Assembly (NCBI RefSeq): GCF_963853765.1
Contig: NC_088860.1
Coordinates: 50,840,001-50,904,000, forward strand
Direction: 5' to 3'
DNA: 64,000 nt
From: Magallana gigas
Taxonomy: Eukaryota
A program made the position numbers and the translations under genes. Below, piece by piece: positions 9,099-55,522 of the stretch; the first letter of the stretch is position 1, and every line of letters starts with the position of its first letter. The notes beneath the pieces are model-generated. The model had not been told where the DNA came from. It worked only from the letters and a program-made list of their open reading frames with translations, and did not search any database.

Positions 9099-9527
9099 TC
9101 AAGTTCTATGGGTTTCACAAAGTTTCCTATATTGTTGGTTTAAAAGTTTTCCATAATTTTCAGCTTGATGAAAAATAATGTAATTGCACATGAACCGTTC
9201 GGCTCTATTATTTGGAAATTTCACATCCTCCGGCAAAACGTCTTTAGCAGTGGAAGGAACTGAGGTCGAGTTAACATCCATCTTCATGGCTCTACGTAGG
9301 TTACTTAAAATGACGTTAATTGATTCTATCATCATTACCATCGATTCGACGTATTCACTTTCTTGACTTATTTCATCTTTTAAGACGTGGTCAAGGTATA
9401 GCCTCAGACGAGAGAGGTTCTCATAATCTCGGGAAAAGTCTGGAGTTATCTGAAAGAAACGGAAAACAAACAAAACTGAGTTGTTATAGCGATATGAAGA
9501 ATTATAGTATGCATTAATAGTGTTTTG

Positions 9528-9611
<84 letters not shown>

Positions 9612-10268
9612 TTTACTTACATCTGTGATGTTTTGAGGTAGATTGAGACCAGGGAAATCACGGGACTGGAGGAACTGGATCAGTGTGTCCCCTGTCACAC
9701 GGTCGTTTTCCGTCTAAAAACGAACAATGCTTGATGTCTAACTCTTAAGAGTGTTAGTTAAATAAATCTCAACTTAATTTTATCCGTAGCATTAAGAAAT
9801 GTCCAAACACTATATTTATCAGATTTGTGATTTTTAATATAATACACCGGTTGGTAGGAGTACCATTCCCCCGATTCTCTCCATTCTAAGAAAATGATCC
9901 AGTACTCACGTAGAGGGTTTTAAGGTTAGTCGCGGCTCTTGTGAAACTCGTCGCGTCCTCTATCAGTGCTTCATATATGATGGAATGAGAAGATCCACAG
10001 GGTGAATCCCAGTTGGCCGGGGCGCCAAAAGTCTGGCCCAGGCAGGCACATAGGAACCCTTTAATAAAGTAAAGCGTGCAAGGTTAAACTCTGACAAACT
10101 TTCACTGTCTGATTCTGTGTGCAAATATTCTAATGCATGTAAAAAAAAAAAAGAATCATATACAATTTTAAAAACATTTTTAGACATATTTCCAGCTTTT
10201 ATATCAACAGTTACAGATTTACAGTTTAGCTTACATGTTCCACAAAATGTGATTTCAAATATTTTCAT
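9099..10268 (-). CDS. Secreted long-chain four-helix cytokine-like protein, paralog 1 (IL-6/LIF/Unpaired-like), 208 aa; exons 10268-10235, 10058-9910, 9713-9621, 9449-9099
   Basis: GT-AG introns (T|GTAAGC, C|GTGAGT, T|GTAAGT; acceptors AAG, TAG, CAG), phases 1,0,0, continuous frame. MKIFEITFCGTWFLCACLGQTFG-APANWDSPCGSS...LKTLY|TENDRV...DFPGLNLPQNITD|ITPDFSRDYENLSRLRLYLDHVLKDE...RAERFMCNYIIF...RKLCETHRT*. Signal peptide, amphipathic helices, clear homology to paralogs 2 and 3. The gene model is well supported; the family name is inference. Confidence 0.85.
9533..9606. repeat. (AG)37 microsatellite inside intron 3 of paralog 1
   Basis: Direct reading; produces the SLSLSL run in the ORF track. 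Confidence 0.95.
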
Positions 10269-10314
10269 TTCTTCTTAATATATTTGTTCATATACCGTGA
10301 ACAACTATTGATAC

Positions 10315-10670
10315 TGTACCTTCAATGCAGTTGTGGCATCATATATATGGCCGAGGATTTGTGTGAGTGTGAGAAAATAATGGAGATTTCAAGGAATGGA
10401 CACCCCCAAAACTCCCTCAGAATGCGATATTCCAACCTCGCTATCGATTCATTACTATTAATGTATGATAGTAAATTTTCCCGTGAACTGAAAGTTAGAT
10501 TATACATAATTAATGAATAATAAAGTATATCAATATACAAGAGTTTCAGTTTTATTTTGAATTTAGCCATCAATATTAGAGTGGTATGAAGGAACTGCGC
10601 AAGAATTGCGGCGGAGGGAAAACAACGTGACGTCACAATTCCAATTCCTCTGCATATTTGTTTACGTCAC
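10315..10670 (-). promoter_or_regulatory. Putative promoter of paralog 1
   Basis: TATATAT at 10347-10341, about 30 nt upstream of an Inr-like CAGT (10315); GAS-type TTCAAGGAA 10388-10396; kB-like GGGAAAATTT 10482-10473; IRF-like GAACTGAAAGT 10485-10495 and AGTTTCAGTTTT 10542-10553; palindromic CRE GTGACGTCAC 10627-10636. Motif matches only. Confidence 0.55.
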
Positions 10671-10834
10671 AAGATCGTAAAATAGATCACATGATTATCG
10701 GCTCCAATTCTTGTTTGGTGTTCACACACATTACATACAGTATTAGTATCCTGACTTCCTAACGTAGAACGAATGCATCTGTCTTCGCCAAAGTGAGAAT
10801 TTAAACTCTCATATATCATTTTAAAGAACTGTAC

Positions 10835-12005
10835 ACACTAACGATGTTGACCTCTACCTGTTCACACTGACGATGTTGACCACAGTTTAGATATCGATGT
10901 CTCTACCTGTACACACTGACGATGTTGATTACAGTTTAGATGTCGATATCTCTACCTGTACACACTGACGATGTTGACCACAGTTTAGATGTCGATATCT
11001 CTACCTGTACACACTAACGATGTTGACCACAGTTTAGGTGTCGATATCTCTACCTGTACACACTCACGATGTTGACCACAGTTTAGATGTCGATATCTCT
11101 ACCCGTACACGCTGACGATGTTGACCACAGTTTAGATGTCGATATCTCTACCTGTACACACTGACGACGTTGACCACAGTTTAGATGTCGATATCTCTAC
11201 CTCTACACACTGACGATGTTGACCACAGTTTAGATGTCGATATCTCTACCTGTACACACTGACGATGTTGATCACAATTTTACATGTCGATATCTCTACC
11301 TGTACACACTGACGATGTTGACCACAGTTAAGATGTCGATATCTCTACCTGTACACATTTACGATGTGACTAAAGTTTAGATGTCGATATCTCTACCTGT
11401 ATACACTAACGGTATTGACCACAGTTAAGATGTCGATATCTCTACCTGTACACACTAACGATGTTGAACACAGTTTAAATTTCGATATCTCTACCTGTAC
11501 ACACTAACGATATTGACCACAGTTTAGATGTCGATATCTCTACCTGTACACACTGACGATGTTGACCACGGTTTAGATGTCGATATCTCTACCTGTACAC
11601 ACTCACGATGTTGACCACAGCTTAGATGTCGATATCTCTACCTGTACACACTGACGATGTTGACCACGGTTTAGATGTCGATATCTCTACCTGTACACAC
11701 TGTACACACTGACGATGTTGACCACAGTTTAGATGTCGATATCTCTACCTGTACACACTAACGATGTTGACCACAGTTTAAATGTCGATATCTCTACCTG
11801 TACACACTAACGATATTGACCACAGTTTAGATGTCGATATCTCTACCTGTACACACTGACGATGTTGACAACGGTTTAGATGTCGATATCTCTACCTGTA
11901 CACACTGTACACACTGACGATGTTGACCACAGTTTAGATGTCGATATCTCTACCTGTAAACACTGACGATGTTGACCACAGTTTAGATATCGATATCTCT
12001 ACCTG
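10835..12005. repeat. 49-bp tandem array, about 24 copies, followed by a degenerate related tract to about 12625
   Basis: Unit TCTCTACCTGTACACACTGACGATGTTGACCACAGTTTAGATGTCGATA; period 49 (10901, 10950, 10999); two units carry an extra short TGTACACAC duplication; the flank has decayed TTTTAGATGTCGAGATCTCT copies. Confidence 0.95.
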
Positions 12006-14973: not shown

Positions 14974-15115
14974 NNNNNNNNNNNNNNNNNNNNNNNNNNN
15001 NNNNNNNNNNNNNNNNNNNNNNNNNNNNNNNNNNNNNNNNNNNNNNNNNNNNNNNNNNNNNNNNNNNNNNNNNNNNNNNNNNNNNNNNNNNNNNNNNNNN
15101 NNNNNNNNNNNNNNN
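14974..15115. other. Assembly gap (142 N)
   Basis: Run of N. Confidence 1.
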
Positions 15116-15455
15116 GGGGTAACTGTTGAAACTGACACCCCGAAAAATCCATTGTCAACCGACGCGAAGCGGAGGTTGACAATGGTTTTCGAGGGGTGTC
15201 AATTTCAACAGTTACCCACCCAAACAAGCACTATTTATTTTCTTATACTGAATTGCTAAATTTTAAAAAGAATTTACTGCTTTTATACAGAAATAAAGTG
15301 AATTCTACGGCAAACCGTACACGCATAATTTACGCGCACGTAACAGTTCGTTGTGTTACCCGTTGCCAAGTCTTGCCAACGCTGAGGGTAATAGAACGGA
15401 TTACCAACTGCGTCTAAACCAATCAGATTTCAGTAATTAACATGAAAGTATAATA
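15116..15455. mobile_element. Dispersed foldback repeat with a long internal hairpin, copy 1 (left end lost in the gap)
   Basis: About 50-bp arms around the loop GACGCGAAGCGGA; a second colinear copy lies at 58190-58550. Confidence 0.75.
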
Positions 15456-15624
15456 AAATAAATTATCTTATAGAAACAGTTAATAAATACTTTGATTTAA
15501 AGATCAAAACTAAATTATGACACTTAAAATATGATGCAAAATTTGAAGCAGAATTTACTTAATTGTAAATGTGGTGGATATAATAACGAAAAAAACCCAT
15601 GTGTAAACTACTTAGGTAGAAATA

Positions 15625-16684: not shown

Positions 16685-16725
16685 TATCACTCTAGACCTA
16701 TCGACAGTTCATGCAAGTTTAGATA

Positions 16726-21846: not shown

Positions 21847-23572
21847 TTATGAAGAAGTCGTCAGATTCAGAAATTTTGCAGATAAATGATTGAGATACTG
21901 AATGTTTTTACTGTAGATGACATAATCCCTGTAGTAGCGACTCGATCGGTCTTCTGATAAGCTTCTTAAATCAGTATTCATGACGTCACGTGTCACATGA
22001 TTTTCAATGGTGACATGAAGAATAGTGTATAAGGTGGTATGTAAATCACACATGAGTTCATAAAGCTTGTCTTGAACTGGTGCCATGAGGTCATAGAGCT
22101 CACTGTGCTCAAAGTACACCTCATCCTCTAGCACTTTCTCCAGAAATACCGCCAGAGTAGACAAAAGTCGGTACTCATTAAGTAAAATTGTCGATATCTG
22201 AAAACCAAAAAGATCAGAAAATCAATATTTTGTCAAACTTCAGTACAACTGTTAACAAACAATTTTTTTTCTCTATAAGTTATACAGCCTACTGTTAAAC
22301 TTACGTTGTTGTTTTTGCAAGCAGTCTGCATGTTATCAGATTCCTCTACCAAATTCAACCCTTCCATGTCGGCGGTCTCCAAGTTCGTAATCAAGAAAGA
22401 ATTCGTTAACCTACGTCCTAGGACTGGTATCTATAAGTAAGTATTCACATAAAAAACCTCATTCCTTGAACTCAATCATAAACAGAACAAAAGTTATAAA
22501 AAAAGGTCGGACGATTAGGTATATAAAACAAACATACGTAGTTTTTCTTTAGAACAATCGCAGCATCTTTCTGTAGAGTGGATTTCACGGACATTGCACG
22601 AAGAGCTTGTTCCACTGGGATGACCATGGGTGGCAGGGAGTCAGATGTGTCTCGTGAACAGGGGGTCTCCCATCGTAGGGTAGTACTTCTTTTTTCTATG
22701 TTGAGTGGGTGGGAATAAATTTGTTCACAATTCCAACTTACAACAGCTGAAACAAAGTTGATATTTCAATTAGACAGCATGGCGTTTACTTTCATTGTAT
22801 CAGATCATTTAGTTTAAAATATGTTGTCATAAAATTAAGATAGTTAGAGAAGTGGCAGTGAATACACGAACATCTGTTTACATTGCTATCTTAACAAATA
22901 TTTGTATAAAAATAGATATTCAGCTTTAAGTTGAAATCATTATTATTAAAATTTTAAGAACAACAGCAATATAGATCCTCTCACATGAATGCGATATTTT
23001 TATCGTTTTTCCGCGTTAACAAAACAATGTTATTGTTTTCCTTTTTTTAGGTCACCTATCTATTATACAGTGATTCTATTTTAGGAATTAAAGGGCCAGC
23101 GAACAGCGATTAAACCATTGACGATTTAAAAAAAAAAAAACCGGAAGACAAGAAGTAACATCAAAAAGCGTTCCATGACTCTTTCGAAACATTATTAACT
23201 CTCGTCAAATTTAAACCCCTAAGTAAACAATAAAACCTGGTACAGTCAGAATAAAACATAGTGTATACAAGCGTTGGCTACATTCTTCAGAGTCGGAAAG
23301 TTGTATATAAAGTACATTTAAAATACACATAACAAACTTATAACATGAAAATCGTTTCTCAATAATATATCGTATTAAGTTAAAGACGTTCATCTTAAGC
23401 TTATGTATTGTGTTTTTCTTTTGCCGTTCATATAAATAAATATCTTAAATATATTATACAACAACCCTATGTCTCATAAGATGAATACGTTCACTATTAT
23501 ATATAATATGTTATGAATCTATAATAGCTTTGACATACCAATTAGGAATGGTAGCAAAATTGTCTTATTCAT
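21847..23572 (-). CDS. Secreted long-chain four-helix cytokine-like protein, paralog 2 (IL-6/LIF/Unpaired-like), 239 aa; exons 23572-23539, 22746-22538, 22430-22305, 22197-21847
   Basis: GT-AG introns (G|GTATGT, C|GTATGT, C|GTAAGT), phases 1,0,0. MNKTILLPFLIAVVSWNCEQIYS-HPLNIEKR-STTLRWETPCSR...LKKNY|IPVLGRRLT...MEGLNL...|ISTILLNEYRLLSTLAVFLEKVLEDE...LYELMCDLHTTL...RSSRYYRDYVIY...NLTTSS*. Exon 1 (34 nt) and exon 4 (351 nt) have the same coding lengths as in paralog 1. Confidence 0.87.
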
Positions 23573-23599
23573 TGTTTCTGTATCAGTGCTCAAATCGCC

Positions 23600-23910
23600 T
23601 TACCTTTCATGAGTGCTCTGTGGCCACTTATATTTATCAATCTGAGTGAGAAATTTTCGGCGAAACACGAAGAGTGGCCACATTGTTTTGGAAAGTTCTA
23701 ACGTCCAACAATCCCTCTCACCTCGACAACAATTCATATCCGGTGGAAGTTGTGGGCATGCGTGGAACTGATTTTCCCAGTTTCATTGTATGTCTTTTAG
23801 TAAAGTTACTTTCACTTCCGCGAATGCAGTAGGCGAATGCAGAGAATTCTTACGTTCACTCTGAATTAAATTCCACGGCGTTGGAGCGGCACATTTTATT
23901 TCCGCGAAAA
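23600..23910 (-). promoter_or_regulatory. Putative promoter of paralog 2
   Basis: TATA-like ATAAATATAAG at about 23637-23627; TTCN3GAA sites at 23656-23664, 23816-23824 and 23900-23908; ETS-IRF composite/ISRE GGAAGTGAAAGT at 23819-23808. Motif matches only. Confidence 0.6.
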
Positions 23911-25477: not shown

Positions 25478-27359
25478 TGACTTTCACCAGGATCTTTTTC
25501 GCGAAAGCTTCACACATTGTCTTCCCACGCGACACTTTATTTTCCCCACAACTTATGTCAATGGTCGAATACTATTTTACAAAGAAAAATTGATAATAAT
25601 GATAATAATGATAATGATATAAAAAAAGAAGCCTATTATTCTCACGGGATCCCACAAAAACGATTTTAATATTACCCCTGAGGAAAGGTAATGTGTGACA
25701 GCAAAGGACCAGGAAAGACTTTTTGACTGCCTTGATTTATAGAATAGATATATACACGAGTATCATTGTATCAATTTATTCACATGTTGTGAAAGGGGCG
25801 TTTAAAATCGAGGTAATTTTGCGAAATCCAACAATGTGTTATCCTGTGCTTTTACAAAGACCTAAAACTAATTAAGTAAATGAGAGTAAACTTTTGTGGA
25901 TAAGTTTAGGTTAAATGTAAAACATTGCGTAGATTTATACATTATTGACGGTCATTACTGGAGGTTGAATGTCTTGCAAATTTGATCGAAAAGCAAGCTG
26001 TAATCAGATATACAAGAAATATAAGTTAGTTAAAAATTTAACAAGATAATATGATTTTATTAAATACTCGCTTAAATGTATGTAACAATGCTTTTATTTC
26101 TTGATCAAACCTTCCTCGGTCGTTATTTACAATAAAAACATCCGACTGCAGAACAACACCACAACATATATTTTAAATTTCACATTTAAAAACAAAGTGA
26201 TAGTTTGAACAGTCTGACAGTTTGAACAGTTCCTTTAGTTACCCGCAACACGTATTGATTTGATGCATCATGCCGTTACTTCTCAAAATTGTATGAAATT
26301 TAAGGATGTATGTTTAGGAACTCGATAAATTATTAATTGATCGAGGTGAAGACATGGTTCTTAAAGTATTTTTTTTTTATGAAAGTAGAATATTGTTCCT
26401 TTAACTAATATAGTTATTGTTTTGTAGGAACAATTGAGGTATACTTTTTTATTAGAGGATATTCGTAAGCAATGTAAAGCTATCACGTGATAATGGACTA
26501 AATTGGCTGTAATGTACCGCTTTATTATAATGCATTGACATCTAATAACAGGAAAAGCATTTCGTTTTTTATATGAAATATTATATTTACTAAGTTTTCG
26601 AATTTTTACGTCAAAGTCTGAATAAGATTTTTGTGGCAACGCACTTTAAAAAAAATCAAAGTGCATTAAATTTAGGACCAAATCAACGCATTTTTAAAAT
26701 GTCTTTAAAGTGCATTACATTTTGGACCAAGTTCACAATCTTTGAATAGAAAATTCAGAGTGCCTCATGATTTCAATCAAAACTTTTTAAAATCTTGTTT
26801 CATCAGCTTGTTTGTCATCTATTACATACCTAATGAATTTCTGAATAGTTTTCGGTTCCATTTCTTACGATTATTTCTGGCAATTCATATATTCTTTAAT
26901 CCCATATTTTTGTAAGGTTTTGAGGATTTACATTAGCAATGGCACAGACAAATAAATGTAGATATATCGAAAAAAAAAAACATGATTTTTTCACTTTATC
27001 GAATTCCTTGTTGTGACTAGCACAATCTTAATTCTTTGATTCTGTGTGTAGGAGCGCGGTATTGATGCACTGAATTCAAAGGAGCACATGATTGATTCGC
27101 AAAATATCAAAGAAGAACGAAAAATTCATCGAATTTTAAGGGACACAGACTTGATACATTAAAACCGCATGACCACAAACTTGGATCCCATGTTGGTACA
27201 CGGGAAGTAAAACATCCCTTGCAGGATTTTGTTTCTGATTGGTGGCCAGTTAAGTTCATTCATTGGCGGATTCTGTTTGATAATGATTGATATTGACTTT
27301 GTGTTTTTCCCTAATATGACATTTTCCCGATTTTGACATTTACCTCAATTATGACGTGC

Positions 27360-27560
27360 CCAGTAGTGTTTAACCCGATTACGACAAAGAGCACACGGCG
27401 GGTGCGACTGGTCAGCAGATCATGCTCACTCCACCTGATCCTACCTCTATCTATTTGGAGGTCCGTGTTGCTTTGCTTTGAATTTGTATTTCGTTTTATG
27501 GATTTTTTCAGATGGTTCAAGGTTTGTTATTGTCATTTTTTCATTGTAATATGCTGTCAT
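27360..27560 (+). mobile_element. Penelope-like element 3-prime tail fragment, inverted relative to the 33.6-kb copy
   Basis: The reverse complement is nearly identical to 33570-33710 (both translate spuriously as KSIKRNTNSKQSNTDLQIDRGRI). Confidence 0.7.
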
Positions 27561-27622
27561 CTCTGGCATTTGATTGGTTTTAATTTACGATGAGTGCACT
27601 CGCCATTTTTTTCTGATGTATA

Positions 27623-29153: not shown

Positions 29154-30555
29154 CTGTTGAGACTGTGTAAACCAAAGATGTACTTGGATACTGTTATGAA
29201 AGTTACTGTTAAGACTATGTACACCAAATATAGAAGTAGACACGATTACTGTTGAGACTATATAAACTAAAAATGTGAGTAAACACGGTTATAAAACTTA
29301 CTGTTGAGACTGAGTTAACCAAAGATGTGAGTAGACACGGTTATAAAACTTACTGTTGAGACTGTATAAACTAAAAATGTGAGTAAACACGGTTATAAAA
29401 CTTACTGTTGAGACTGTATAAACTAAAAATGTGAGTAAACACGGTTATAAAACTTACTGTTGAGACTGAGTAAACCAAAGATGTGAGTAGACACGGTTAT
29501 AAAACTTACTGTTGAGACTGTATAAACTAAAAATGTGAGTAAACACGGTTATAAAACTTACTGTTGAGACTGTGTAAACCAAAGACGTAGTTGGAAACGG
29601 TAACAAAAGTTACTGTAGAGACTGTGTAAACCAAAATTGTGAGTAGACACGGTTACAAAGGTTACCATTGAGACAGTGTAAACTAAAGATGTGAGAAGAC
29701 ACGGTTACAAAGGTTACTGTCAAGACTGTGTAAACCAAAGATTTTAGAAGACACGTGGTTACAAAGGTTACTGTTGAGACTGTGTGGACCAAAGATGTGA
29801 TTAGAAACGATTACTAAGGTAACTGTTTAGACAGTGTAAACCAAGGATGTGAGTAGAAACGTGGTTACAAAGGTTTCTGTTGAGACTGTGTAAACCAAGA
29901 ATGTGATAAGACAGGTGTTCACAAAGGTTACTGTTGAGACAAAGTAAACAGAAAATGTGAATAGACATGGCTACTTAGTCTACTATTGAGACTCTATAAA
30001 CAAAAGATGTGAGTAGACACGGCTACAAAGGTTACTGTTGAAACTTTGTAAACCAAAGATTTTAGAAGACACGTGGTTACAAAGGTTACTGTTGAGACTG
30101 TGTTGACCAAAGATGTGATTAGAACGTTTACTAAGGTTACTGTTTAGACAGTGTAAACCAAAGATGTGAGTAGAAACGTGGTTACAAAGGTTGCTGTTGA
30201 GACTGTGTAAACCAAGAATGTGATAAGACAGGTGTTTACAAAGGTCACTGTTGAGACAGTGTAAACCAACGATTTCGTAAGACACGGTTACAAGGTTATT
30301 GTTTAGACAGTGTGAACTAAAAATGTGAGTAGACACGGTTACAAAGATTACTATTGAGACAGTGTAAGGCAAAAATGTGAGTAGACACGGTTACAAAGGT
30401 TACCGTTGAGACAGTGTAAACTAAAGATGTGAGTAGACACGGTTATCAAGGTTACTATTGAGACGGTGTAAACCAAATATGTAAGTAACCAGTTACAAAG
30501 ATTACTGTTGAGACATTGTAAACCAAAGATATGGGTAGACACGGTTACAAAGGTT
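29154..30555. repeat. 52-bp tandem array, about 27 copies, with higher-order blocks
   Basis: Unit GAGACTGTGTAAACCAAAGATGTGAGTAGACACGGTTACAAAGGTTACTGTT; period 52 (29303, 29355); source of several spurious ORFs. Confidence 0.95.
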
Positions 30556-32953: not shown

Positions 32954-33559
32954 TACATTTATATTTTCTTCTGATTTTATCATAAATAGGTTTTTGCAAA
33001 ACTAAAGCGAATTTTATTTTAGTAAGGATATTGCCATTTTTTAAAGACAATTTTAATGTTTTTTTTTAAATAATAATGATTTTTTTGTAATTGTTTACCG
33101 AATGACTATATGTATTTTTTCTGCGTGGTGGTCGCGTACAGCTCTTTTTCGCGGCCTTTCTATATATCTGTTTATATTCTTGCCGACGTATTGAAAACGT
33201 TTACGTATTTCAGATACTTCTTCGCAAAATAATATTAATATTGCACATGTATACAAAACAATGAATTTTAACATATCTTTATTATTTTCTTGGTCAAAGA
33301 GAAATAATCATCAAATTATTATGAAACAAGTATAGCTATTTTAAGCAATCAGGCTTTTCAGATCTATAAACGCGTCATGTATTCTGAAATAGTGTCGTCC
33401 CTACTAGTTTATACACGGAATGAGAAATTACTCATTTACAATTATATTAAGAGGATATTTGAATATGTGTACTCATCTAGGTATAAAAGCTATGATGCAT
33501 TAAAAAGCTTTAATGCACACATATGCATAAATGTTTTCAATGAAAAAATGACAATAACA

Positions 33560-34290
33560 AACCGTGAACAATCTCAAAAATCCATAAAACGAAATACAAA
33601 TTCAAAGCAGAGCAACACGGACCTCCAAATAGATAGAGGTAGGATCATTTGCCTATGAGGCGTAAGAATCCTCTGCTGACCGGTTACAACCGCTGGGTGC
33701 TCTTTGTCGTAAAATTCGGAAAAGTCTGTAGACAAATAGGTGATTAATTATGGTTACACAAATAGTATGAAAAACGTCAGTCAGCATGCGACCCAGTGGA
33801 AGATTGTATTTGCTGACAAGGTCGTTATATCGACCATATAACTTACAAAAAGATAACTTCAAACGAGACCGTTGATAGGCCTGTTTTTATCAACTTGTTT
33901 GTCAGTAGCTTGTTTCGTCTTAAAAACTGTTCATACGAAGAGCACGCCCTTGCGTATCGAATCAACTGAGGGACAAAACACCATTTGCAGGTGATGAAGG
34001 TATATTGCTACAATTACATAAGGAAAGCTTACTATAGAAAACTTGAAGTCATCGCGTTTATCATAAAGTTTTGCTGTTACGTAACCATCAATGTCTATGT
34101 CCAGTGAAATATCCAAATATGAAACAGATGTCGCAGACTCTATGGTATCTTTTATTTCAAATTCACTGGGATATATCGAGTTGACGTAAGTATGGAAATA
34201 ACAATTGTTAATTGATAATACGTCGTCGATATACCTGAATGTTGAATTGAAGGCCACAGCGAGTGATTTTTTTTTCACGTTATACTTATA
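33560..34290 (-). mobile_element. 5-prime-truncated, frameshifted Penelope-like retroelement (RT C-terminal part plus tail)
   Basis: SLAVAFNSTFRYIDDVLSINN...SYLDI...LYDKRDDFKFSIVSFPY (YIDD RT motif), continuing after frameshifts as KLSFCKLYGRYNDLVSKY. Confidence 0.85.
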
Positions 34291-35451
34291 TGACAATAAA
34301 ATTAAATATGATGAATAATATATTATCAAAAACAATCAATGGAACCGACAATATCAATTTTAATTTATCGATACACTATCTTTTTTAAACATCGAATGAC
34401 GATTAAGACAAATAGCATGTAAAGTAACATTTGGCCTAGTGATGCAGCCTACTGATCTACTGATTAACATCAGACAGATTTGTGTCTCGAAACCCTATCG
34501 CGACAGCTGATTTTTATATGAATATTATATACTATAAATATTATTGATTTTTCAAGTGCCATTTAACTTAAAATATCATACAATAGATAGAAAACAACGA
34601 TAATAAAAACTCATAATCATATTACATAATCAACATGGAGTTTTTTCAAACTATGTATTAAGCCGAGATCTATTTTTTTTGTATTTCCGCGTTTTGCTAA
34701 CTAGCATAAAAAACTTAATACCGTAATAACAACATATCCTGTTATAAAAACTGACATTATAAGACTAAGGGAGAATGGAAGCAGTGAGTATTAGTAGAAT
34801 CCTCATTCTTACTTTATTATAAACAACCAAAGTTTACGTACTTATGTTTTTGAATAATTGATTAGGCTGTACACTGTTTAAAATAGGAAACAGCGCTTGT
34901 ATTATAAAATAGTAAACATTTAAGACTTTAGGTATTTTTTCTAGCAATCTTTTAAAAACTTTTAGGGTGTCAAGTACATTGCATTATTTTCACGTAAATT
35001 TGTTATCAATTTCTGTAAATATTTGCGATGTTGTATTTTTTCAGACGTTTTTATTAGGTAAATCTTTGACATGAAAATGATAAACACAAATATAACAACC
35101 GGGAAGAAAGTTATTTCTATAAAAAGTCTGATAATCACCAATTGTATAATAAAAGTAAAGGTTCAAAAATTACGAAAATCATACACAAACAGAGTAATTA
35201 GAATCACAACAAAGATTGATGTAAACAAGACGTTTTGATGCCTCTAAGTTTGTTAATAAAAATACGATTAAATAAAGTACAAAATAATATATTACAAAAT
35301 ACACATAAATTTAATGCCCCTTCCTTAACATAGATAATTGCTAAAAAACATTTTTTCTTGTATAAAGGCAACGCCTAAAAATGAAACAATGCGGTACATC
35401 TATTTTTCTGTCCCACTTATGTTCATAACAATTAGCAGCAAGGCAGACACG

Positions 35452-37856
35452 TTAGACAATGGTGGGTGCGTTTAACTGACTTCGGATATGATCGGCGTAA
35501 GCAATGGATTCTTTGAGAATAACGAAATCTTGATAAAATCGGTACTGATTGTTACTTGTACGGAATCTGTTTATGTTTTTTATTTCCATGCACTTTGCCT
35601 CGACGCGCAGTATAGTATGAAGATCAAAGCGGACGTGGTACAGCGTCTGGTTGGCCTCTTGTATAAAATTTGATAACTCGCCGTAGCTGTATTGGTCTTC
35701 GTCTTTTTTCATCAAGTCCAAATAAGACGAAATTAATGTCAGAGTCTTGTAGACATCCAGAAGGCTAGCAACTGTTGACTGAAATTATAAAATAGGTCAT
35801 TTTGAAAAAATGCTCAAACTATTTAAGAGAATTTTATTTCGAGAAATTAAGAGAGAAATAGAACGAAAATAAGGAATAAATATCTACCTTTGATGGTTCC
35901 AAAGAAAAGGGAGACGTGACATCCAGTTCCATGATTTTTTGTGACCTTAAAGCATCAATTGTTCGGTTACTGGTTATTCTTCTTCCTTGAGGAGGTATCT
36001 GTAAAACAACGGCATATTGATATTCAAGTTACATCAAATTCATAGTTTTCATATTGAATTTCAAAATCCGTCATTTTCACATCCGTAAAATCATGTATAT
36101 GTGTTTCTCCATTTTATAGTTTATAACAAAAAAGCAGCAAACAACGTATAACATTGCAAGCTAGAAATTTATAAACAAAATTGCTTACATATTTTTCTAT
36201 CAGTTTTTGTGTGGCGTTGTGAAACAAATTAAGTCTAATCCACAAATTCTGAGCAATTTCTTCCCTTGTAATGTTCGCAGCATTGATGGTCGAATCGACA
36301 TTGGAACTCTTGGTGGGACATGGCTTTGAGATATGTCGTGAGGCCACAAAATGACCGAGGAACAAAATCAATCCTAAAAATGAAATTAAACGGATTGAAA
36401 GAATTATCAAAATGATAATATACATATTTAAAATGTCATTTTCTTGCAAATCAATATTTTTTAAATCTATTTTTCTATCAATCTATATTGATAGAAAAGT
36501 TTTCGTTAACATATAGATAGATGTTTTCATCTATTTTTAGGAGGGCTTTGGCTTTTTTTATTTGAAGCGATTTAAATTTCTTTAAAAATTGGTTGTGATC
36601 GTTAAAAAGTTATAATGTGCTTGAAATAACAATTCTTCAAAATCCACGATGTTAGAATTTTGTTGTTAAAACAAAACTCTACGCCATGGTAAATGTTGCC
36701 AGTATTCTGAGTTATGTCATGATGTAGAAAAAAGTAAATGTACTATTAAAACAAGTGCTAGTCACAATTTTTCCTGATGAATCACATAGTATAGTTATGT
36801 ACCATTCAAAGGTTTTTTCTTCTAAAAACACCATCAGTATCTAAATGTACTATTGTTTTTATTAATAATTTTTAAACTCCTATTATAACATTGGTAATAA
36901 GGGTTTGTACTCAAAACCTTGACAATCACAATTGATTACACAATAGGCTTAAGAACCAAACAGCTGTGGTGTTTAACCAATGACAATGTCAACTTGAAAC
37001 ACTAATATTAGAACTCTTTAAAGCTTAAATATCAAAATTGAACTTATATTTACGGTTTGATAAATTTTTGAAATAAATTTCATTGCAATTTTTTAAGACC
37101 CCCTCCCCTCCCTACATGCACATTGTTTATATTCCAAAAAAGTTTAACGGTTTCGTCTTATGTATAATAAATCAGTCAAATAAACCGAACCCTAAAAACT
37201 GTTCTTAATAATAACATGACTCTCTGTGTTGTAATGGAATTGTTTAGATCGGGTTTATATACAACATTATCAAAAAATTACTTTCATCCAACAAACTACT
37301 TCAAATTGATGTTCGATAATAATAAGAAAAAAATATTTTCAAAACATATTAAGTTTAAACCGAAACTGGCTGTTCGTATTTGTACCCTGAAAAACATTTT
37401 GTCGATATTTTAGGAAGGAAATATCGATCACGATGAACACAACTAAATCCTTAAAGTTCAGAGTAACATAACACTCTCAATAATCCGTGCTGTCTAAATA
37501 CAAAGCGATTGTTTCAAATCAAAAATGTACTTTTAAACTTTTTTTTTAAATAAATATATGTTTTGTTTCAATTTAAAAACATATCCTAGCTGAATCGTGA
37601 TTATTAAGAGGAATGCATCAACGTCTTTAAAGATTAGAGTAACAAACTGATATCGATAATTAGTGCTTTTAAGATATTAAAGGCTTTAGAATTATAAAAG
37701 ATACACTCTGATTATAAAAAAAGTTTTAAAATTTTAAATAATGTTTAAGGAAAAAAGTAATGTATTTGAATGTAATAAACACACTATCTTAAAAAAATTC
37801 TGTTAATGTAAGATATTTGTTTTTAATTAGAGCTTACCAAATGATAGTATATACAT
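35452..37856 (-). CDS. Secreted long-chain four-helix cytokine-like protein, paralog 3, 213 aa; exons 37856-37838, 36373-36189, 35998-35888, 35778-35452
   Basis: GT-AG introns (G|GTAAGC, T|GTAAGC, G|GTAGAT), phases 1,0,0. MYILSFGLILFLGHFVAS-RHISKPCPT...LIEKY|IPPQGRRIT...|STVASLLDVYKTLTLISSYLDLMKKDE...LYHVRFDLHTIL...QYRFYQDFVILKES...NAPTIV*. TATAAA at 37904-37899. The exon 1 choice is supported by its conserved counterpart in the pseudogene. Confidence 0.83.
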
Positions 37857-47900: not shown

Positions 47901-48399
47901 TGTAACATAATCAACTTGGGTTGTTATGAAAGTATGTTTTTAGCCAAGATCTTTTTTCATTTTTTATACTTCCGCGTATTACCAACTTGTATGTTATCAT
48001 TTGTAAGCTTTTAAAACGGCAATTCTTCTAATAAAAGCTGACATCACAGAATTAAGGGAGAATGAAAATTGAGTATTGGCTAATTTATGGAAACTCATTT
48101 GTTCAAAACAAAACAAAAAACATGTACAAAACAAACAGACCTTTAGCTTTCATAGTATTGTTTTTTGAAGGACTCAATTTTAGCAGCATCTGTAATTAAA
48201 ATCACGAGGCAATTTTAAAGTAAAGTGCAAAAATATTCAGTTTTCAACTTATGTCTCTTTTTTTATGAAAAAAAAGAACCACTGAAATAAAGATGCAAAA
48301 AGTTAATAATCAGTCACATACCTGCGTCGCCTGAGATAGAGTGATGCTCCAATGCAAATTTTCTAAATAGTTTTGATCCATCCACCCCCCCCCCCTGAT

Positions 48400-49130: not shown

Positions 49131-50980
49131 TGCTGTTAATTTCTGATATCGCTGAAATCAGGAAACTTGTAGTTGTTAAAAGCGTCATCATGTGTCAACC
49201 GATAGAAACAAGGGGAATAATCCATTTGTTTGTGGATGCGAAAATTATATCAAGAAAAATATTTTTTGGCACCTTACTATTATCATTATTGTTCGTTGGG
49301 GACCACTCCCGTGGCATATTTAAATACTTTAAATGTTTTAGAGAAATACATCATTTTAAAGTAAAATTTCAAACAATTACTAAATCATTTTGCATTGCTA
49401 CAATGCAGCAATGCTATATTTTCTATTTTCTGTCAAACATTTGTATGACTAAAAATCATTTAACAATGAATAGATATATACTGTGCCTTTGACATGAGGT
49501 TAATCAAACCAAAATAACAACTAGGAAAGGTACAAACATCTATGAAAAATATGTCTCTCAACAACTGTATAATAAACGTACAACAAGTGTACCGAAACTA
49601 GTTTATTGTTCATAAAAATTAGTAATTATGAACATGTACAGGGGAACAAGAATAACAACATAGTTTAGTGTAAACATGATAAATAAGCAATAAAGATGTT
49701 TTGTTACGTTTGTTAAATTTGTTTATAAAAATTAGCATAAAATAATGTACAAAATAGTTTATTGCATTGTCTGCATAGATTTAATGCCCCTTTCTCAACA
49801 ATGATATTTGTAAAAGAACGTTTTACAGTTTCATATAGAAAAAAAAAATAAATGCTAAAAATAAAACACAAAGGTACATTTATTTTGCTGGCCCACTTCA
49901 TAACAATTAAGAGCAGAGCAGACACATTAGACAATAGTGAGTTCGTTTGGCTGACTTTTAATATAATCGGTGTAACCTACGGGATATTCTTCTTACTTGT
50001 GATAGCATCTGTTAGACAGTAATATATTGAAACTCTGGTTAAATCAGATTCATAGTTATCATATTGTATTGCAAAGTATCTCATCTAAATAGCCATAAAA
50101 GAATTTAAATGAGTTTCTCCCATTTATAGTTTATAACAAAAGAAAGGCAACAATCAAGCTGAAATAAGATAAACAAATTGCTTACATATTTTTCTCTTAG
50201 TTTTTGTGTGGCGTTGCGAAAGAATTTAAGCTTGAACAACAGACTTTTGTCGACTTCTTCCCTTGTAAATTTTGCGACATTCAAATTAACACTGAACTTT
50301 TTGTGGGACATGGCTTTGAAATATCTCGTGACGCCACAAAATGACTGAGGAAGAAAATCCATCCTAAAAAGAGAACATTAAAATGATGAGTGATGAAAGC
50401 TTTTGATCGTTAAACATTTATTTATTTTATGCAAAAATAACACGTCTTAAATGATCACGATGTCAGAAATTTGCTCTTAAAATATACACCCCTACCCAAC
50501 CGTAAAACTTGCCAGCATTCTTAGTTATGTCATGATATAGCAATGGGTAAATGTATTATTAGAACAAACGTTCATGCACGTTTTCCCGATGAACAAAGAA
50601 TACAATTATGCATCATGCAAACTTTTTTTCTTCTAAAAACACAACTATATCCAAATGTACCATTGTTGTGATCAAAAGTTCGCCTTTCATTATAACAATT
50701 CTGATAAGGGTCTGTACCCTTAGCTTTCACAATCAAAGTTTATTACACAATTAGCTTGAGAATCAAACAGATGTGGTGTTTAACTAATGACAATGACAGC
50801 TTGAAACACTAATGTCAGAATTCAGCTTTAATATAAAAAAAATGAAGTGAATCTATTTTTACGATTTGTAAATTTTTTAGATAAATTTCAAGGCGATTTC
50901 CAAAACGCTCAACAAACCGCTATTGTTTTTATATTCCAAGAGACATAGTGGTTTTGTTTTATGTTTAATTATTATGTCAA

Positions 50981-52292
50981 ACTAGATACGATCTCGTTAC
51001 GAGTAACGAATAGGTCTTCCGTTCAATTTTCTAAACGCTATGATTAAAATATCAACGAAATTTCAAAATTCCCCCTAAACCCCTCCCTTTCAGATAATGT
51101 ATACGATTGTCAATATTCTTTAAAATGCTTAACAAAGTGTTTGGCTTTTTCAGATACAGCACATTAAAGATTTAAGATTTTAGTCCCCTAAAATCCCTAA
51201 TTACGTCTTCAATGGATATGGCAATGAGTATTACAAACTGATATTGTAACGATCAACAACTTTTCTTCAATAATGCATTACAAAATTTTAATCGTTTTTA
51301 AGGTATGTGTAAGAGACTTTACGAATGTCTTGGTCCCTAATTTAAGGGGCCAGCCCCTTTTTCTTGAGTTCATTCGAAAGGACTCACGAATACTGACTTT
51401 TTTTTTGTTCTTACAGCTATCTAAAATTGTTATTTATTTTTTAGATGAAAATGATTGAATATTTTAGGGGCCAGCCCTCTAGATCCTTAATAGGGACATA
51501 CATGAATGTTTTGATTATTGGAATAGATTAACATCATAAATGCAAAGATTTTCTCTTCTATGATGCCTTACAAAATATGTCTCCTTTAGAAATATTGCGT
51601 CAAAGTTTAGGTTCTTTTGCCCCTAAAAATCCCTAATTACGTAAAAAAAGGGCGTGGCAATGATTTTTATTAATAGATATTGTTACGATCAACAACTTTG
51701 CTTCTGTAATGCATAACAATATCTTTGTCATTTTGGAGTTATTTGTAATAGAGTTTACGAGTGTTTTGGCCCCTTATTAAAGGGGCCAGCCCCTTTTTCT
51801 TGATTTTGTTGGAAAGACCTTTTGATTATTTACTACTTTTTTATATATATATGTCTTAACAAAATATCAGCTGATAAAAAGATACTAATCAAAACGTATG
51901 AATATTTTGAATGATAATTTGTACCCAATTTTCGTGCCTATGCGAGCTCCAAGAAATGACACAACAGGCGTTAAACAATTGCATGCTGCACAACTTCAAG
52001 CTATAGTCTACCTACCTTGAAAGTTTCATATTCATATCTCTAATGGTTTCCGATTTTATAGCTAAAAAAAACCGGGTCGTCAAAGACTACAAACTGGCCG
52101 ATAATTCGGTACCGGAAGAGACTAAAAAAAGTTAAGATCACGTCTAAACATCTGTGAAAAAATGGTCGAAATCGGTCGAACAGATTTCTCATGAAATCTC
52201 ATGCACAAAATTTTGAAAAAAACCCAAAACTGATAGTAAGAAACAGTATGAAAACAATAATGTCTCTCGTTGGAAACGGAAGACCTTAATAA
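50981..52292 (-). mobile_element. Helentron-type element inserted in intron 1 of the pseudogene, same family as 42386-43211 but inverted
   Basis: ACTAGATACGATCTCGTTACGAGTAACGAATAGGTCTTCCG at the left end and GGAAACGGAAGACCTTAATAA at the right end; the flanks rejoin as in paralog 3 intron 1 (GTCAA|...|AC.GAACC). Confidence 0.85.
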
Positions 52293-52928
52293 ACTGAACC
52301 ATAACAATTAATTTGGATGCTAACATTACTCTCTGTGTTGTTACAGACGAGTTCAATCTAGCTTATCAACGACATAATAAAAAAAATACTACCATCTAAA
52401 ACTGATGTTTGACAATAAAACAAACAAATATTTTCAACCAAAACTGAATTTTTGTATTTATATCCTGAAAAAGTATTTTGTCGATATTTTCCGGAAGGAA
52501 GTATCGATAATGGAGATGAAATATAACTAGATTTTCAAAGTTCAGAGTGACATAATAGTCTCGATAATCAGCGCTTTCTAAATGCCAAGCGACTGTTTCA
52601 AATTCAAAATGTACTTTTGTACGTTTTTATTTATATATGTTTTTGTCTCAATTTTTAAAACATATTCTAGTTGAATAGTGATTATAAAGATAGATGCATC
52701 AAAATCCTCAACGTTTTAAGATTCAAACTAATATCGATAATTAGTGCTTTCTAGATTCTTAGTGACTGTTTAATTTAAATAAATGTGCACTTTAATTTAA
52801 AAGAAAACTACTTTTAAGCTTTTTTGTTTATGCTAAAAAAGTAAGATTATATTTGAATTTTATAAACAATTGATTTAAACATATTTCTGTTTATGAAAGA
52901 AATTGTTATCTATAGAGATGTTTATCGA

Positions 52929-53411
52929 TACGGTTAACCTCGTTTAAAGCAAAGTTCGAAGGACCAATAGATTTACTTCGTTACATCCGTAATTCGTTAT
53001 ATCCTTAAAACGAATTCGTAAAAATAACTAAAGCGCAATCACTGTATACATGTTTTCTTCACCAGACTATAATTTTTGCTAACTGAGGCTTAAAATAAAA
53101 ATACATTACTTTGATACCTTAAATAATCGGATTGTGAATTTAAAAAAATATATATGAAAAAAAAATTATTCAGAATTTTGGTATTATGTTCAATGGTAGT
53201 GCTTACTTTTTAATTTGTAAAGAAATTTGTATTAGTGTTAAATTTTTTTATTATTAATCTCTAGGGGACTCGAAATCAGTTTGCTATATCCGTTAAATCG
53301 TAACATTCAAATTCGTTATAACCTTTAAATTTTGCAAAGATTTGATAAGAGTTTTACCGGGAACTTAAAAAACTTCGCTTTATCTGAGATTAGCTATATC
53401 CGTGTTTGCAT
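52929..53411. mobile_element. Degenerate pogo/Tigger-type MITE in intron 1 of the pseudogene
   Basis: TACGGTTAACCTCGTTTAAAGCAAAGTTC left end, repeated TTCGTTATA(T/A)CC subterminal motifs; absent from paralog 3 intron 1. Confidence 0.6.
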
Positions 53412-55522
53412 GATTTTTACTTTATTTGTTTTTCTTTGAGCTCACCGAATGAAAGCATTTACATGGTTTAAACTAATTGATATCTAGCTGGATTTCGACT
53501 TTAAATTTATAAAGAAACTTTTTATGATATAATAAGATAAATAACCGAAACAAAAGACTATATGTTTATGCATTTCTCGTTTCCAAAATTAAAATTCTAT
53601 AACAAGTTTTAAAAATTGGGTTAAAAATAGTTGTAATCTTATCAAAAGTAAGTGTGTAAAAGTTTTTTCCAACAGTGACGTTATAATGTAGAAAAGACGT
53701 CATGAAGATTGTCTTATTTTGATAAATTTGTGTTTTGGTAAAAAAAAAAATGATTGATTTCCGACGGTTTTTCGACCGGGAATCTTTCAGCTCATGCATG
53801 CTTAAGTACCATTTTTAAATATCATGTGTAAAATTATTTACACCAAATTATACATCAAACTCATACTTGAGCAGTCTGTGCTCTTTACTTCCAAATGCAA
53901 AATCTATAAGAAAAATGGCAATTTTTTTATTTGTTTGCAAAATTGCAGGGGATATGTCAATTTTGGTGACGTCATAGATGAAGAGCTGCTGGAAAATGAT
54001 CACTCTGGAAAATGATCACTGATATCAAGATTAATGTGATAGACATGTATAATTTTTTATGATTTAAATACGATATCATTTAAAAATTGATTAAAACTGG
54101 AGGCAGATATTTGACCATACCAAATACAGTCCTTTTTATTAAGACTGCCTCTCTCGTTTAATTTTACATTTTGTCCTCATGCATTCTTTAAGTATGACAT
54201 CTTTTTGTAGACCACAATCAGTATTCATCCATGTGTACAAACTGTCATATATTCAGGTTATGTAAATTATACAATCTCTGTTCTTTTTATTGATTAACTT
54301 CATAATTTCCATTCTTTACATATATTGCTGCTTACTTGTCTTTTGAAACTATTGTTAGTAAGCGGACATAAACGTATAATTTTAAGGTATGGCATAAAAT
54401 TTGAGAAGTGGTGTTCAAATATAGATTCTGCACTTGTTAAAACCCCAAAACACATGGGTATAGTCCAATAATGCATTTTCCATAGGCGGTAATGTTAACG
54501 TTAGGATTAATAGCTCCAGCCATATTTTTTGTTCAGCAACGAGTTACCCCTTGAATGACAGCTCATCAAATTGCCTCTTCCCTGTCAATTCGTTTTCCGG
54601 TGTTATATAGTGCCTTTTCCCTCTAGCCATCTTTCCCCCGGAAAAATGGATATATAGCAGTTTTCCCCCCGGAAAAATGGCTATATAGCAGTTTTTCCCA
54701 CTCGGAAAGCTGACTATATAGTGGGTTTTCCCCCTTTTTATAGCCAGATTACCCCCACGGAAAACCTACTACATAGTAGATTTTCCCCCTTTTTTACATT
54801 CCGATCATGTTTATGGCGGACCATTCGTGGCAATAATTTGCAATAACTGATATGATATTAATTTCTCATAATAATAGGTAATTATGGCATTTATAAATAC
54901 ACAGAATAAATTTGTTTCACCCCTGATATAAACAAAGGCACGCGCCTTCATAACATTCCTGTGTCTTCACCATTTATTTCACTTTTTGTTACACCTTTTT
55001 GAAACACCTTTTACGTGGATTTCCGATGATTATCTACAGTTTTGAGTTCGACGTTATGACATTGATATTTTTCACAGAACACGTCAGAATACATTTGAGT
55101 GAAAATACGCCGATTTGGATCTTTAATTTTCCCATGTATTATCATCTATGTATAAGCTTCTCCTAGGAAAGTAACTGACTAATCTTGACTTAATTTTGTA
55201 GAGGAAGGGAATAAAAAGTAGAAATGTATTAATCCCTTCGTCCAAACGGCTATTAATTTTAAATCAATACCGTTAGAATTGACGATCTTATATATAATCA
55301 TATATTTCTACTTATCAATATCAAACAAGAGACAGCTAGGGTGCAATGATATGATGAGAAACCGAAATGTTTTACTTCGATTGATGGGGTTCTTAATCAT
55401 GGGTAAGGGGTATTATAATTAATTATGTATTAAAGGTATGTGTAAAGTTAGTATTTACAATTTCGTTTTAAAGTCACGTATATTCATATTCATGTTTTTA
55501 TGCACATTTTTAACGAAACGCG

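What the first reader, a model, noticed from the sequence alone, without database searches (positions are those of the whole stretch)
9099..53464. Tandem cluster of molluscan IL-6/Unpaired-like helical cytokines hidden from the ORF track
Seen: three spliceable genes and one pseudogene, all minus strand, all with a tiny first coding exon (34, 34, 19, 19 nt), intron phases 1,0,0, exon 2 ending in L-x-x-x-Y, a signal peptide, (W)xxPC, helix B Y-x-x-L-x-x-[LI]-x-x-[FY]L-x-x-[VM]-x-x-DE and helix D R-[FY]-x-x-[DN]-[YF]-x-I, with otherwise low mutual identity. Established: vertebrate long-chain class-I cytokines (IL-6, IL-11, G-CSF, LIF) have a phase-1 first intron then phase-0 introns; as I recall, Drosophila Upd1 has W-A-N-P-C and L-C-E-L motifs matching WETPC and MCDL here. 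Inference: these are candidate ligands for the bivalve gp130/Domeless-type receptor and JAK/STAT pathway, whose ligands are poorly defined, and candidates for the secreted factor behind interferon-like antiviral responses in oysters. I cannot tell whether they are already annotated or named.
Basis: partly seen in the sequence, partly recalled or inferred. Interest (0 to 1): 0.92.

Follow-up and report, generated by a model that had tools for sequence, protein, structure and literature searches.

The report
Oyster IL-6-family-like cytokine gene cluster
A row of small four-exon oyster genes encodes proteins whose predicted shape closely matches vertebrate IL-6-family cytokines (IL-11, CNTF, LIF, IL-6), which makes them candidate ligands for the mollusc JAK/STAT pathway, for which no ligand is known.

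Summary
Three intact minus-strand genes (208, 239 and 213 aa) and one broken copy sit at the stated places. All have GT-AG introns in phases 1,0,0 and tiny first coding exons of 34, 34, 19 and 19 nt. RNA contigs from three runs show the predicted junctions of gene 2, and a transcript-derived protein is 98% identical to it. Genes 1 and 3 have no RNA evidence here.

The genes belong to an unnamed family with no Pfam match. Members are labelled 'uncharacterized' in bivalves, gastropods, an annelid, a brachiopod, many insect orders and a copepod.

AlphaFold2 models of gene 2's transcript product (pLDDT 88) and of a same-genome gene-3-like paralog (pLDDT 74) are long-chain four-helix bundles. In an unbiased comparison with 48,161 solved chains, the top 22 hits were all helical cytokines, led by gp130 ligands: IL-11, CLCF1, OSM, LIF, CNTF and IL-6 (Z 15-17). 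The first non-cytokine scored Z 9.

The cluster extends beyond the window: six intact genes in about 104 kb, plus one more at 45.4 Mb.

Receptor binding, JAK/STAT activation, kinship with Drosophila Unpaired and any antiviral role could not be tested.

Best reading: new protostome members of the class-I long-chain cytokine kind.

The parts
10235..10268 (-). g1 coding exon 1 (34 nt, ATG plus start of the signal peptide; phase-1 donor GTAAGC)
   Evidence: model; hydrophobic N-terminus. No RNA evidence obtained.
9910..10058 (-). g1 exon 2 (rest of signal peptide, WDSPC, helix A; ends LKTLY)
9621..9713 (-). g1 exon 3 (AB loop)
   Evidence: Intron 3 holds a (CT)n microsatellite and reads through in frame without a stop.
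9099..9449 (-). g1 exon 4 (helices B, C, D and stop)
   Evidence: Exon-4 relatives at 97%, 74% and 61% identity on other oyster contigs. dN/dS about 1.1 against the 74% copy.
23539..23572 (-). g2 coding exon 1a (34 nt; gives a strong signal peptide)
   Evidence: Joint 22746>23539 in RNA run X2; hydropathy 3.18.
23604..23777 (-). g2 alternative first exon 1b (ATG at 23610, 7 coding nt, also phase 1; product starts MKAVVSW and has no signal peptide)
   Evidence: Joint 22746>23604 in a 994-nt RNA contig of run X12. Protein P0123 from 73 Logan sequences. In-frame stop upstream.
22538..22746 (-). g2 exon 2 (WETPC, helix A; ends LKKNY)
22305..22430 (-). g2 exon 3 (AB loop with short helices)
   Evidence: Joints 22197>22305 and 22430>22538 in runs X1, X2 and X12.
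21847..22197 (-). g2 exon 4 (helices B, C with LMCDL, D and stop). RNA contigs run on to about 21713 as 3' UTR.
37838..37856 (-). g3 coding exon 1 (19 nt)
   Evidence: Not confirmed by RNA.
36189..36373 (-). g3 exon 2 (signal peptide end, SKPC, helix A; ends LIEKY)
   Evidence: Same junctions as the annotated paralog proteins P0006/P0101.
35888..35998 (-). g3 exon 3 (AB loop)
35452..35778 (-). g3 exon 4 (helices B, C, D and stop)
   Evidence: dN/dS 0.34-0.35 against paralogs L011/L012.
53446..53464 (-). Pseudogene exon 1 remnant (19 nt, codon 2 is TAA)
50180..50372 (-). Pseudogene exon 2 remnant (1-nt and 6-nt deletions, so frameshifted)
49714..49980 (-). Pseudogene tail: last about 17 codons of exon 4 plus 3' UTR. 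The stretch in between (most of exon 3, intron 3, most of exon 4) is deleted.

Best explanation
The window holds part of a tandem, same-strand cluster of genes for secreted long-chain four-helix-bundle cytokines.

Anatomy of each gene:
- A tiny first exon and the start of exon 2 encode a signal peptide.
- The rest of exon 2 encodes a (W)xxPC segment and helix A.
- Exon 3 encodes the long AB loop.
- Exon 4 encodes helices B, C and D.

The proteins belong to an unnamed family spread across protostomes. Their predicted structure is closest to the vertebrate gp130-ligand (IL-6) family.

Most likely mechanism (inferred, not shown): the secreted protein bridges chains of the oyster's Domeless/gp130-like class-I cytokine receptor, and this switches on JAK and STAT.

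The cluster evolves by birth and death. It shows deep divergence (21-24% identity), a recent duplicate pair, one dead copy, and fast change between oyster species. g2 also uses an alternative first exon that removes the signal peptide, so part of its output may stay inside the cell.
For: Genes are real:
- Intact GT-AG models with phases 1,0,0.
- g2 junctions appear in RNA contigs of three runs.
- A transcript-derived protein is 98.2% identical to g2 over 227 aa.
- g3 is under purifying selection against its paralogs (dN/dS 0.35).

Family:
- A profile built from the three last exons finds 83 proteins at E<=1e-3 among 1.84 billion.
- Full-length members of 200-257 aa come from bivalves, gastropods, Owenia, Lingula and insects.
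- A 175-member subfamily covers insects and a copepod.
- Conserved across the family: W..PC, Y..L...VFLE...DE, LY..LC.L, VTRDVM, R..RDY.I.

Fold:
- AF2 model of the g2 transcript product: pLDDT 88.3, pTM 0.84. Model of a g3-like paralog: pLDDT 74, core above 90.
- VIA Z 18.7 to CNTF (170 of 174 residues, 2.4 A), 18.0 to IL-11, 16.9 to CLCF1, 16.3-16.4 to OSM and LIF, 15.4 to IL-6.
- In the unbiased search the top 22 of 48,161 chains are all helical cytokines, and the first non-cytokine scores Z 9.0. The second model gives the same order.
- Foldseek against PDB, Swiss-Prot and AFDB clusters lists the same families.
- ESM features point to CT-1/CNTF, LIF_OSM and IL6 clusters.

Secretion: N-termini are hydrophobic (KD 1.8-3.2).

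Context: a 2026 survey reports IL6R-like receptor, JAK and STAT in Mollusca but no IL-6-like ligand (PMC13203501).
Against: - No sequence-level hit to Pfam IL6, LIF_OSM, CNTF or Hormone_1 or to any solved cytokine. Kinship with vertebrate cytokines rests on predicted structure alone.
- I could not locate a receptor. Exon-wise searches of the genome with PF09240 and PF06328 found nothing, and their control genomes were also silent.
- I have no expression data by tissue or challenge. The raw-read run laid no reads.
- The only g2 transcript form the protein search returned (P0123, 73 member sequences) lacks a signal peptide.
- g1 and g3 have no RNA evidence here.
- g1's last exon evolves at dN/dS about 1.1 against a 92%-identical locus.
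- g1 and g3 lack the family's nearly invariant helix-C cysteine.
Confidence: 0.6

Rival explanations
1. They are secreted four-helix proteins of the cytokine fold, but they act as hormones or growth factors in development or neuroendocrine control (as growth hormone, prolactin and leptin do), or through a receptor other than a Domeless/gp130-type chain. They would not be immune cytokines.
For: Placental lactogen and prolactin score nearly as high as IL-6 (Z 15-16). ESM neighbours include Hormone_1 clusters. The insect subfamily is far better conserved (40-66% identity across orders) than immune cytokines usually are. No ISRE or NF-kB motifs lie upstream.
Against: gp130 ligands lead both unbiased structure searches. 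Tandem expansion, a dead copy and 56-62% identity between oyster genera fit fast-evolving immune ligands. GH/PRL-type hormones also signal through class-I receptors and JAK/STAT, so the mechanism would differ little.
Confidence: 0.2
2. The likeness to cytokines is convergence or a modelling artefact of amphipathic helices. The proteins would be helical secreted or intracellular proteins of unrelated function.
For: There is no sequence similarity to any known cytokine family. Helical bundles often give middling Z-scores (tool note). The only g2 transcript form returned lacks a signal peptide.
Against: The match covers 165-173 of 165-178 residues in sequence order, including the long crossover loops. 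Z of 15-18.7 is far above ferritin-like and other bundles (Z 7.6 or less). Two models from different subfamilies agree. Model confidence is high. The language-model features are an independent line of evidence.
Confidence: 0.07
3. Part of the cluster is decaying. g1 in particular may be a transcriptionally silent or neutrally drifting copy, so only some of the 'three genes' are functional.
For: g1's exon 4 has dN/dS about 1.1 (1.5 in the first half) against a locus that is 92% identical in DNA overall. The helix-C cysteine is lost. I found no full-length annotated or transcript-derived g1 protein. One neighbour is already a pseudogene.
Against: The frame is intact over four exons with good splice sites. 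The C-terminal half is strongly conserved among the three g1-like copies. A dN/dS near or above 1 confined to helices B and C is also what positive selection on a receptor-binding face would give.
Confidence: 0.3

Closest known systems
Vertebrate IL-6/gp130-ligand family (IL-11, CNTF, CLCF1, LIF, OSM, IL-27p28, IL-6)
   Same: Size (about 180-210 aa mature). Signal peptide. Long-chain up-up-down-down four-helix bundle with long AB and CD loops. Near full-length structural alignment at Z 15-18.7 and rmsd 2.4-3.3 A. An N-terminal segment with a conserved Cys and a conserved Cys in helix C; from memory, this recalls the N-terminus-to-helix-C disulfides of LIF and OSM. A tiny first coding exon followed by a phase-1 intron; from memory, IL-6 and LIF also have 19-nt first coding exons.
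   Different: No detectable sequence similarity (10-15% identity in structural alignments; no Pfam or PDB sequence hit). Four exons, with helices B to D all in one exon. The family's own conserved motifs (VFLEQ..DE, VTRDVM, RDYII) have no counterpart that I could identify. The receptor is unknown.
Insect Unpaired ligands (Drosophila Upd1-3; Aedes Upd-like, bioRxiv 10.1101/2025.09.21.677592; Nasonia unpaired-like)
   Same: Protostome secreted helical cytokines that activate Domeless/JAK/STAT. The oyster family has clear sequence relatives in many insect orders (E down to 1e-4 from an oyster-only profile; 175 members).
   Different: No listed insect relative is named Unpaired, and none of the 120 listed rows is labelled as a fly or a moth. 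I could not obtain a Drosophila Upd sequence, so membership is untested. From memory, Upds are about 400 aa, longer than these proteins.
CgIFNLP, the oyster interferon-like protein
   Same: An oyster helical cytokine candidate linked to JAK/STAT-type antiviral responses (PMC9756803).
   Different: CgIFNLP is described as class-II (interferon-type). In this study interferons score only Z 10-12, against 15-17 for gp130 ligands. These are different genes in a different family.

Membership tests
Long-chain class-I four-helical cytokines (fold level) | Four long helices in up-up-down-down order, joined by long AB and CD crossover loops | tested here: met
   AF2 helices at 47-70, 115-143, 149-173 and 198-229, with long loops between A/B and C/D. 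The paralog has the same layout. Sequential alignment covers 170/174 residues of CNTF and 165/165 of IL-11.
Long-chain class-I four-helical cytokines (fold level) | Secreted: cleavable N-terminal signal peptide | tested here: inconclusive
   Hydrophobic N-termini in g1, g2 (exon 1a) and g3 (KD 1.8, 3.2 and 2.9), but no signal-peptide predictor was available. The g2 exon-1b isoform lacks one (KD 0.5).
Long-chain class-I four-helical cytokines (fold level) | Binds the cytokine-binding module of a class-I receptor and activates JAK/STAT | not testable with these tools
   No receptor protein could be obtained by reference. Genome searches with PF09240 and PF06328 were silent, including in the control genomes.
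IL-6/gp130-ligand family (Pfam IL6, LIF_OSM, CNTF, IL11) | Sequence match to the family profiles or to solved members | tested here: not met
   None of the 53 family members scanned hits any cytokine Pfam model at E<=5. The profile against PDB sequences finds nothing relevant.
IL-6/gp130-ligand family (Pfam IL6, LIF_OSM, CNTF, IL11) | Closest structural neighbours are family members | tested here: met
   Ranks 1-7 of 48,161 chains are IL-11, CLCF1, OSM, LIF, IL-27p28, CNTF and IL-6. The second model gives the same set.
IL-6/gp130-ligand family (Pfam IL6, LIF_OSM, CNTF, IL11) | Receptor-site signatures (for example the FxxK site-III motif of LIF/CNTF-type ligands; motif recalled from memory) | tested here: inconclusive
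   The start of helix D carries the family's own R..RDY.I motif, and I see no literal FxxK there.
Unpaired (Upd) family of insects | Significant sequence similarity to Drosophila Upd1, Upd2 or Upd3 | not testable with these tools
No tool returned a Drosophila Upd sequence. The insect relatives found are all labelled 'uncharacterized'.
Unpaired (Upd) family of insects | Domeless-dependent activation of JAK/STAT | not testable with these tools
   This needs an experiment.

The most novel reading that the evidence does not exclude
These genes are lophotrochozoan members of one ancient bilaterian cytokine family. That family would also include the conserved insect 'uncharacterized' proteins, the fast-evolving fly Unpaired ligands and the vertebrate IL-6/LIF/CNTF group. 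On this reading they are the missing ligands of the molluscan Domeless/gp130-JAK-STAT pathway, and the oyster cluster has diversified under host-pathogen selection.
Probability: 0.4. Interest if true: 0.9.

Novelty: new member of a known kind. Interest (0 to 1): 0.78.

Why it matters
Molluscs have JAK, STAT and an IL6R/Domeless-like receptor, but no ligand has been identified. [quoted passage not shown]

This cluster gives concrete gene models that can be expressed as protein for testing. The same sequence family exists in annelids, brachiopods and most insect orders. In insects, Unpaired orthologues have repeatedly been reported as missing (PMC7071726; Aedes preprint).

If confirmed, the open question 'what activates JAK/STAT in lophotrochozoans' becomes directly testable. 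It would also push the origin of IL-6-type cytokines back to the bilaterian ancestor. For aquaculture, these would be new candidate regulators of oyster haemocyte and antiviral responses.

Tried and rejected
- Pfam scans of 10 and then 53 family members: only scattered chance hits, and no cytokine family.
- Family profile against all PDB sequences: nothing relevant.
- Genome-wide exon-wise search for receptor domains PF09240 (IL6Ra-bind) and PF06328 (Lep_receptor_Ig): no match. The control genomes were also silent, so this says nothing about absence.
- Co-folding with a receptor: not attempted, because no receptor protein was available by reference.
- Unpaired membership: no Drosophila sequence was obtainable. 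Loehlin & Werren 2012 (Nasonia upd-like) is not held in the paper library.
- Literature searches by LOC identifiers of the orthologues, and for IL-6-like/CNTF-like proteins in oysters: nothing. Structure-based searches for invertebrate cytokines: nothing relevant.
- Raw-read RNA run X21: no reads laid on the stretch, so it is no test.
- Promoter motif count: no ISRE, NF-kB or AP-1 sites. There are three GAS-like TTCNNNGAA sites near g2 exon 1b against about 0.5 expected. This is too weak to use.
- Earlier findings of the scan: none for this place or these words.
- I did not fold the window's own g1 or g3 full-length proteins, because a spliced protein has no reference and I did not type long sequences. 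A 98%-identical transcript product (P0123) stood in for g2, and a same-genome paralog (P0006, 71% identical to g3) stood in for g3.

Full report
WHAT IS THERE.

The window is AT-rich (32% GC) and has one assembly gap at 14974-15115. All three are on the minus strand, each inside an open last exon. Reading the minus strand around them and scanning for short ATG-to-GT first exons gave three four-exon models.

- g1: 10268-10235, 10058-9910, 9713-9621, 9449-9099 (208 aa).
- g2: 23572-23539, 22746-22538, 22430-22305, 22197-21847 (239 aa).
- g3: 37856-37838, 36373-36189, 35998-35888, 35778-35452 (213 aa).

All introns are GT..AG and the phases are 1,0,0. First coding exons are 34, 34 and 19 nt. Exon 2 ends in L-x-x-x-Y in every copy. 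The three proteins are only 21-24% identical, yet two of the pairs are significantly related (E 4e-9 and 3e-12).

The fourth copy is dead. Its 19-nt first exon (53464-53446) has a stop at codon 2. Exon 2 (50372-50180) is frameshifted. A deletion removes the equivalent of g3 35501-35967.

The gap lies in intergenic DNA, 4.7 kb from g1 and 6.7 kb from g2. It is followed by a 49-nt palindrome. No gene model depends on it. The g1-g2 adjacency does.

ARE THE GENES REAL?

For g2, yes. RNA contigs from three metatranscriptome runs labelled as oyster skip exactly 22197>22305 and 22430>22538. One run joins 22746>23539, which is the predicted 34-nt exon. Another joins 22746>23604, an alternative first exon at 23604-23777. 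All joints have CT..AC ends on the plus strand, which is GT..AG on the minus strand.

A protein assembled from public transcript contigs (P0123; its cluster has 73 member sequences) is 98.2% identical to g2 over 227 residues and carries the exon-1b start. Exon 1b supplies only Met-Lys, and an in-frame stop lies upstream. That isoform therefore has no signal peptide (hydropathy 0.5), whereas exon 1a gives a strong one (3.2). The C. virginica orthologue is annotated with analogous isoforms.

For g3, the support is indirect. Annotated proteins of its close paralogs use the same junctions, and dN/dS against those paralogs is 0.35.

For g1, I have only the intact model. Its last exon differs from a 92%-identical locus at dN/dS of about 1.1. 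This could mean drift or positive selection.

FAMILY.

A profile of the three last exons found 83 proteins at E<=1e-3 among 1.84 billion representatives. The full-length members are 200-257 aa and match in their C-terminal 110 residues.

Named members are all 'uncharacterized' or 'hypothetical'. They come from Crassostrea virginica, Magallana gigas/C. angulata, Ostrea edulis, Saccostrea, Mytilus, Tegillarca, Pinctada, the gastropods Gigantopelta and Lottia, the annelid Owenia, the brachiopod Lingula, and insects. One Lottia entry has the automatic UniRef name 'Ciliary neurotrophic factor'.

An alignment of the insect hits retrieved 175 proteins from Hymenoptera, Coleoptera, Blattodea, Orthoptera, Hemiptera, Thysanoptera, Ephemeroptera and a copepod. 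None has a functional name.

Conserved features across the family are W..PC near the mature N-terminus, Y..L...VFLE...DE, LY..LC.L, VTRDVM and R..RDY.I. No Pfam model matches any member, and no solved protein matches by sequence.

FOLD.

AlphaFold2 on P0123 with a 53-sequence family alignment gave pLDDT 88.3 and pTM 0.84. The model has four long helices (47-70, 115-143, 149-173, 198-229) and long AB and CD connections. A model of P0006, a g3-like paralog from the same genome, has the same layout (pLDDT 74, core above 90).

Foldseek's top hits in PDB and Swiss-Prot are almost all long-chain cytokines: LIF, CNTF, IL-6, IL-11, cardiotrophins, G-CSF and prolactins. The E-values are weak.

DALI-scale alignment is decisive:
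- CNTF Z 18.7 (170 of 174 residues, 2.4 A).
- IL-11 Z 18.0.
- CLCF1 Z 16.9.
- OSM Z 16.4.
- LIF Z 16.3.
- G-CSF Z 16.2.
- prolactin Z 16.1.
- IL-6 Z 15.4.

In a search that does not rely on Foldseek, the first 22 of 48,161 representative chains are all helical cytokines, and gp130 ligands hold ranks 1-7. The best non-cytokine has Z 9.0, and ferritin-like bundles score 7.6 or less. The second model reproduces this order.

AlphaFold DB clusters list arthropod and mollusc uncharacterized proteins first, then cardiotrophin-2, CNTF, OSM, IL-6 and LIF. Protein-language-model features independently place the oyster and insect proteins next to CT-1/CNTF, LIF_OSM, IL6, IL11 and Hormone_1 clusters.

GENOMIC CONTEXT.

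The window is C8:50,840,001-50,904,000 of a 564-Mb assembly. More family members lie outside it on the same strand:
- One at about 50.826 Mb, an orthologue of Ostrea LOC125657706.
- Two g3-like genes at about 50.909 and 50.929 Mb, 94% identical to each other.
- One on the other strand at 45.43 Mb, an orthologue of Saccostrea LOC134234800.

The cluster therefore holds six intact genes and one pseudogene in about 104 kb. The product of the 50.909-Mb gene is identical to M. gigas UniProt A0A8W8IGQ4 over exon 4, except for the last residue. I infer that the genome is M. gigas or a very close relative.

Orthologues of g2 are only 56-62% identical in Saccostrea, Ostrea and C. virginica. That is fast evolution.

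MECHANISM.

Shown: the genes exist, g2 is spliced and expressed, the family is old and wide, and the predicted fold is that of gp130-type long-chain cytokines.

Inferred: secretion, binding to a Domeless/gp130-like class-I receptor, JAK/STAT activation and any immune role.

Established knowledge of the fold class says these ligands act by bridging receptor chains through faces on helices A/C and D. A 2026 survey reports the receptor, JAK and STAT in Mollusca but no ligand (PMC13203501).

I could not locate a receptor with exon-wise Pfam searches, so I could not co-fold one. The interferon-like antiviral idea has no support here.

COMPARISON AND NOVELTY.

At fold level the proteins pass the test for long-chain class-I cytokines. 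At sequence level they are not members of any curated cytokine family. Membership in the Unpaired family is plausible: there are clear insect relatives with KWVNPCG and LCELQ motifs. It remains untested because no Drosophila sequence was available.

The literature I could search holds no description of this family in molluscs. Insect papers still report Upd orthologues as missing or only recently found.

I rate it a new member of a known kind. Interest is high because it makes an open question testable.

Noticed in passing
window 23604-23777 (minus strand): g2 has an alternative first exon 1b that replaces the signal-peptide exon. The only transcript-derived g2 protein the search returned starts MKAVVSW and should not be secreted. 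C. virginica annotates analogous isoforms. From memory, this recalls the alternative first exons of mammalian LIF.
   Followed up: partly
G000:C8:50825900-50826232, 50909030-50909350, 50929497-50929820 (minus strand) and 45430631-45430918 (plus strand); loci L011-L014: Four more intact family members lie outside the window. The tandem cluster spans about 104 kb with six intact genes, and a seventh gene lies 5.4 Mb away.
   Followed up: partly
window 10852-12005: A 49-bp minisatellite of 23 copies begins about 580 bp upstream of g1's start codon.
   Followed up: no
window 29246-30555: A 52-bp tandem array of 25 copies (80% matches) lies between g2 and g3. It produces the repetitive HCLNSNLCNHVS-type open frames.
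   Followed up: no
window 9530-9612 (intron 3 of g1): A long (CT)n microsatellite sits inside intron 3 of g1. The intron reads through in frame without a stop, which creates a misleading 199-aa open frame at 9099-9698.
   Followed up: yes
window 33931-34335 (minus strand): An open frame with a YIDD-type motif looks like a reverse-transcriptase fragment of a retroelement. Near-identical peptide stretches in frames at 27311-27520 (minus) and 33377-33658 (plus) suggest two inverted copies of another repeat.
   Followed up: no
window 15117-15217: A 49-nt perfect-type palindrome (86% complementary arms, 3-nt loop) starts immediately after the assembly gap. It is a possible cause of the gap.
   Followed up: no
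window 23664, 23824, 23908: Three GAS-like TTCNNNGAA sites (two of them TTCGCGGAA) lie in or just upstream of g2 exon 1b, against about 0.5 expected. This is a weak hint of STAT feedback.
   Followed up: partly
window 35600-35640 (g3 helix C) versus L012: g3 has Arg where its closest paralogs have the helix-C Cys. It also lacks two further Cys of those paralogs, leaving a single Cys pair in the mature protein. g1 also lacks the helix-C Cys.
   Followed up: partly
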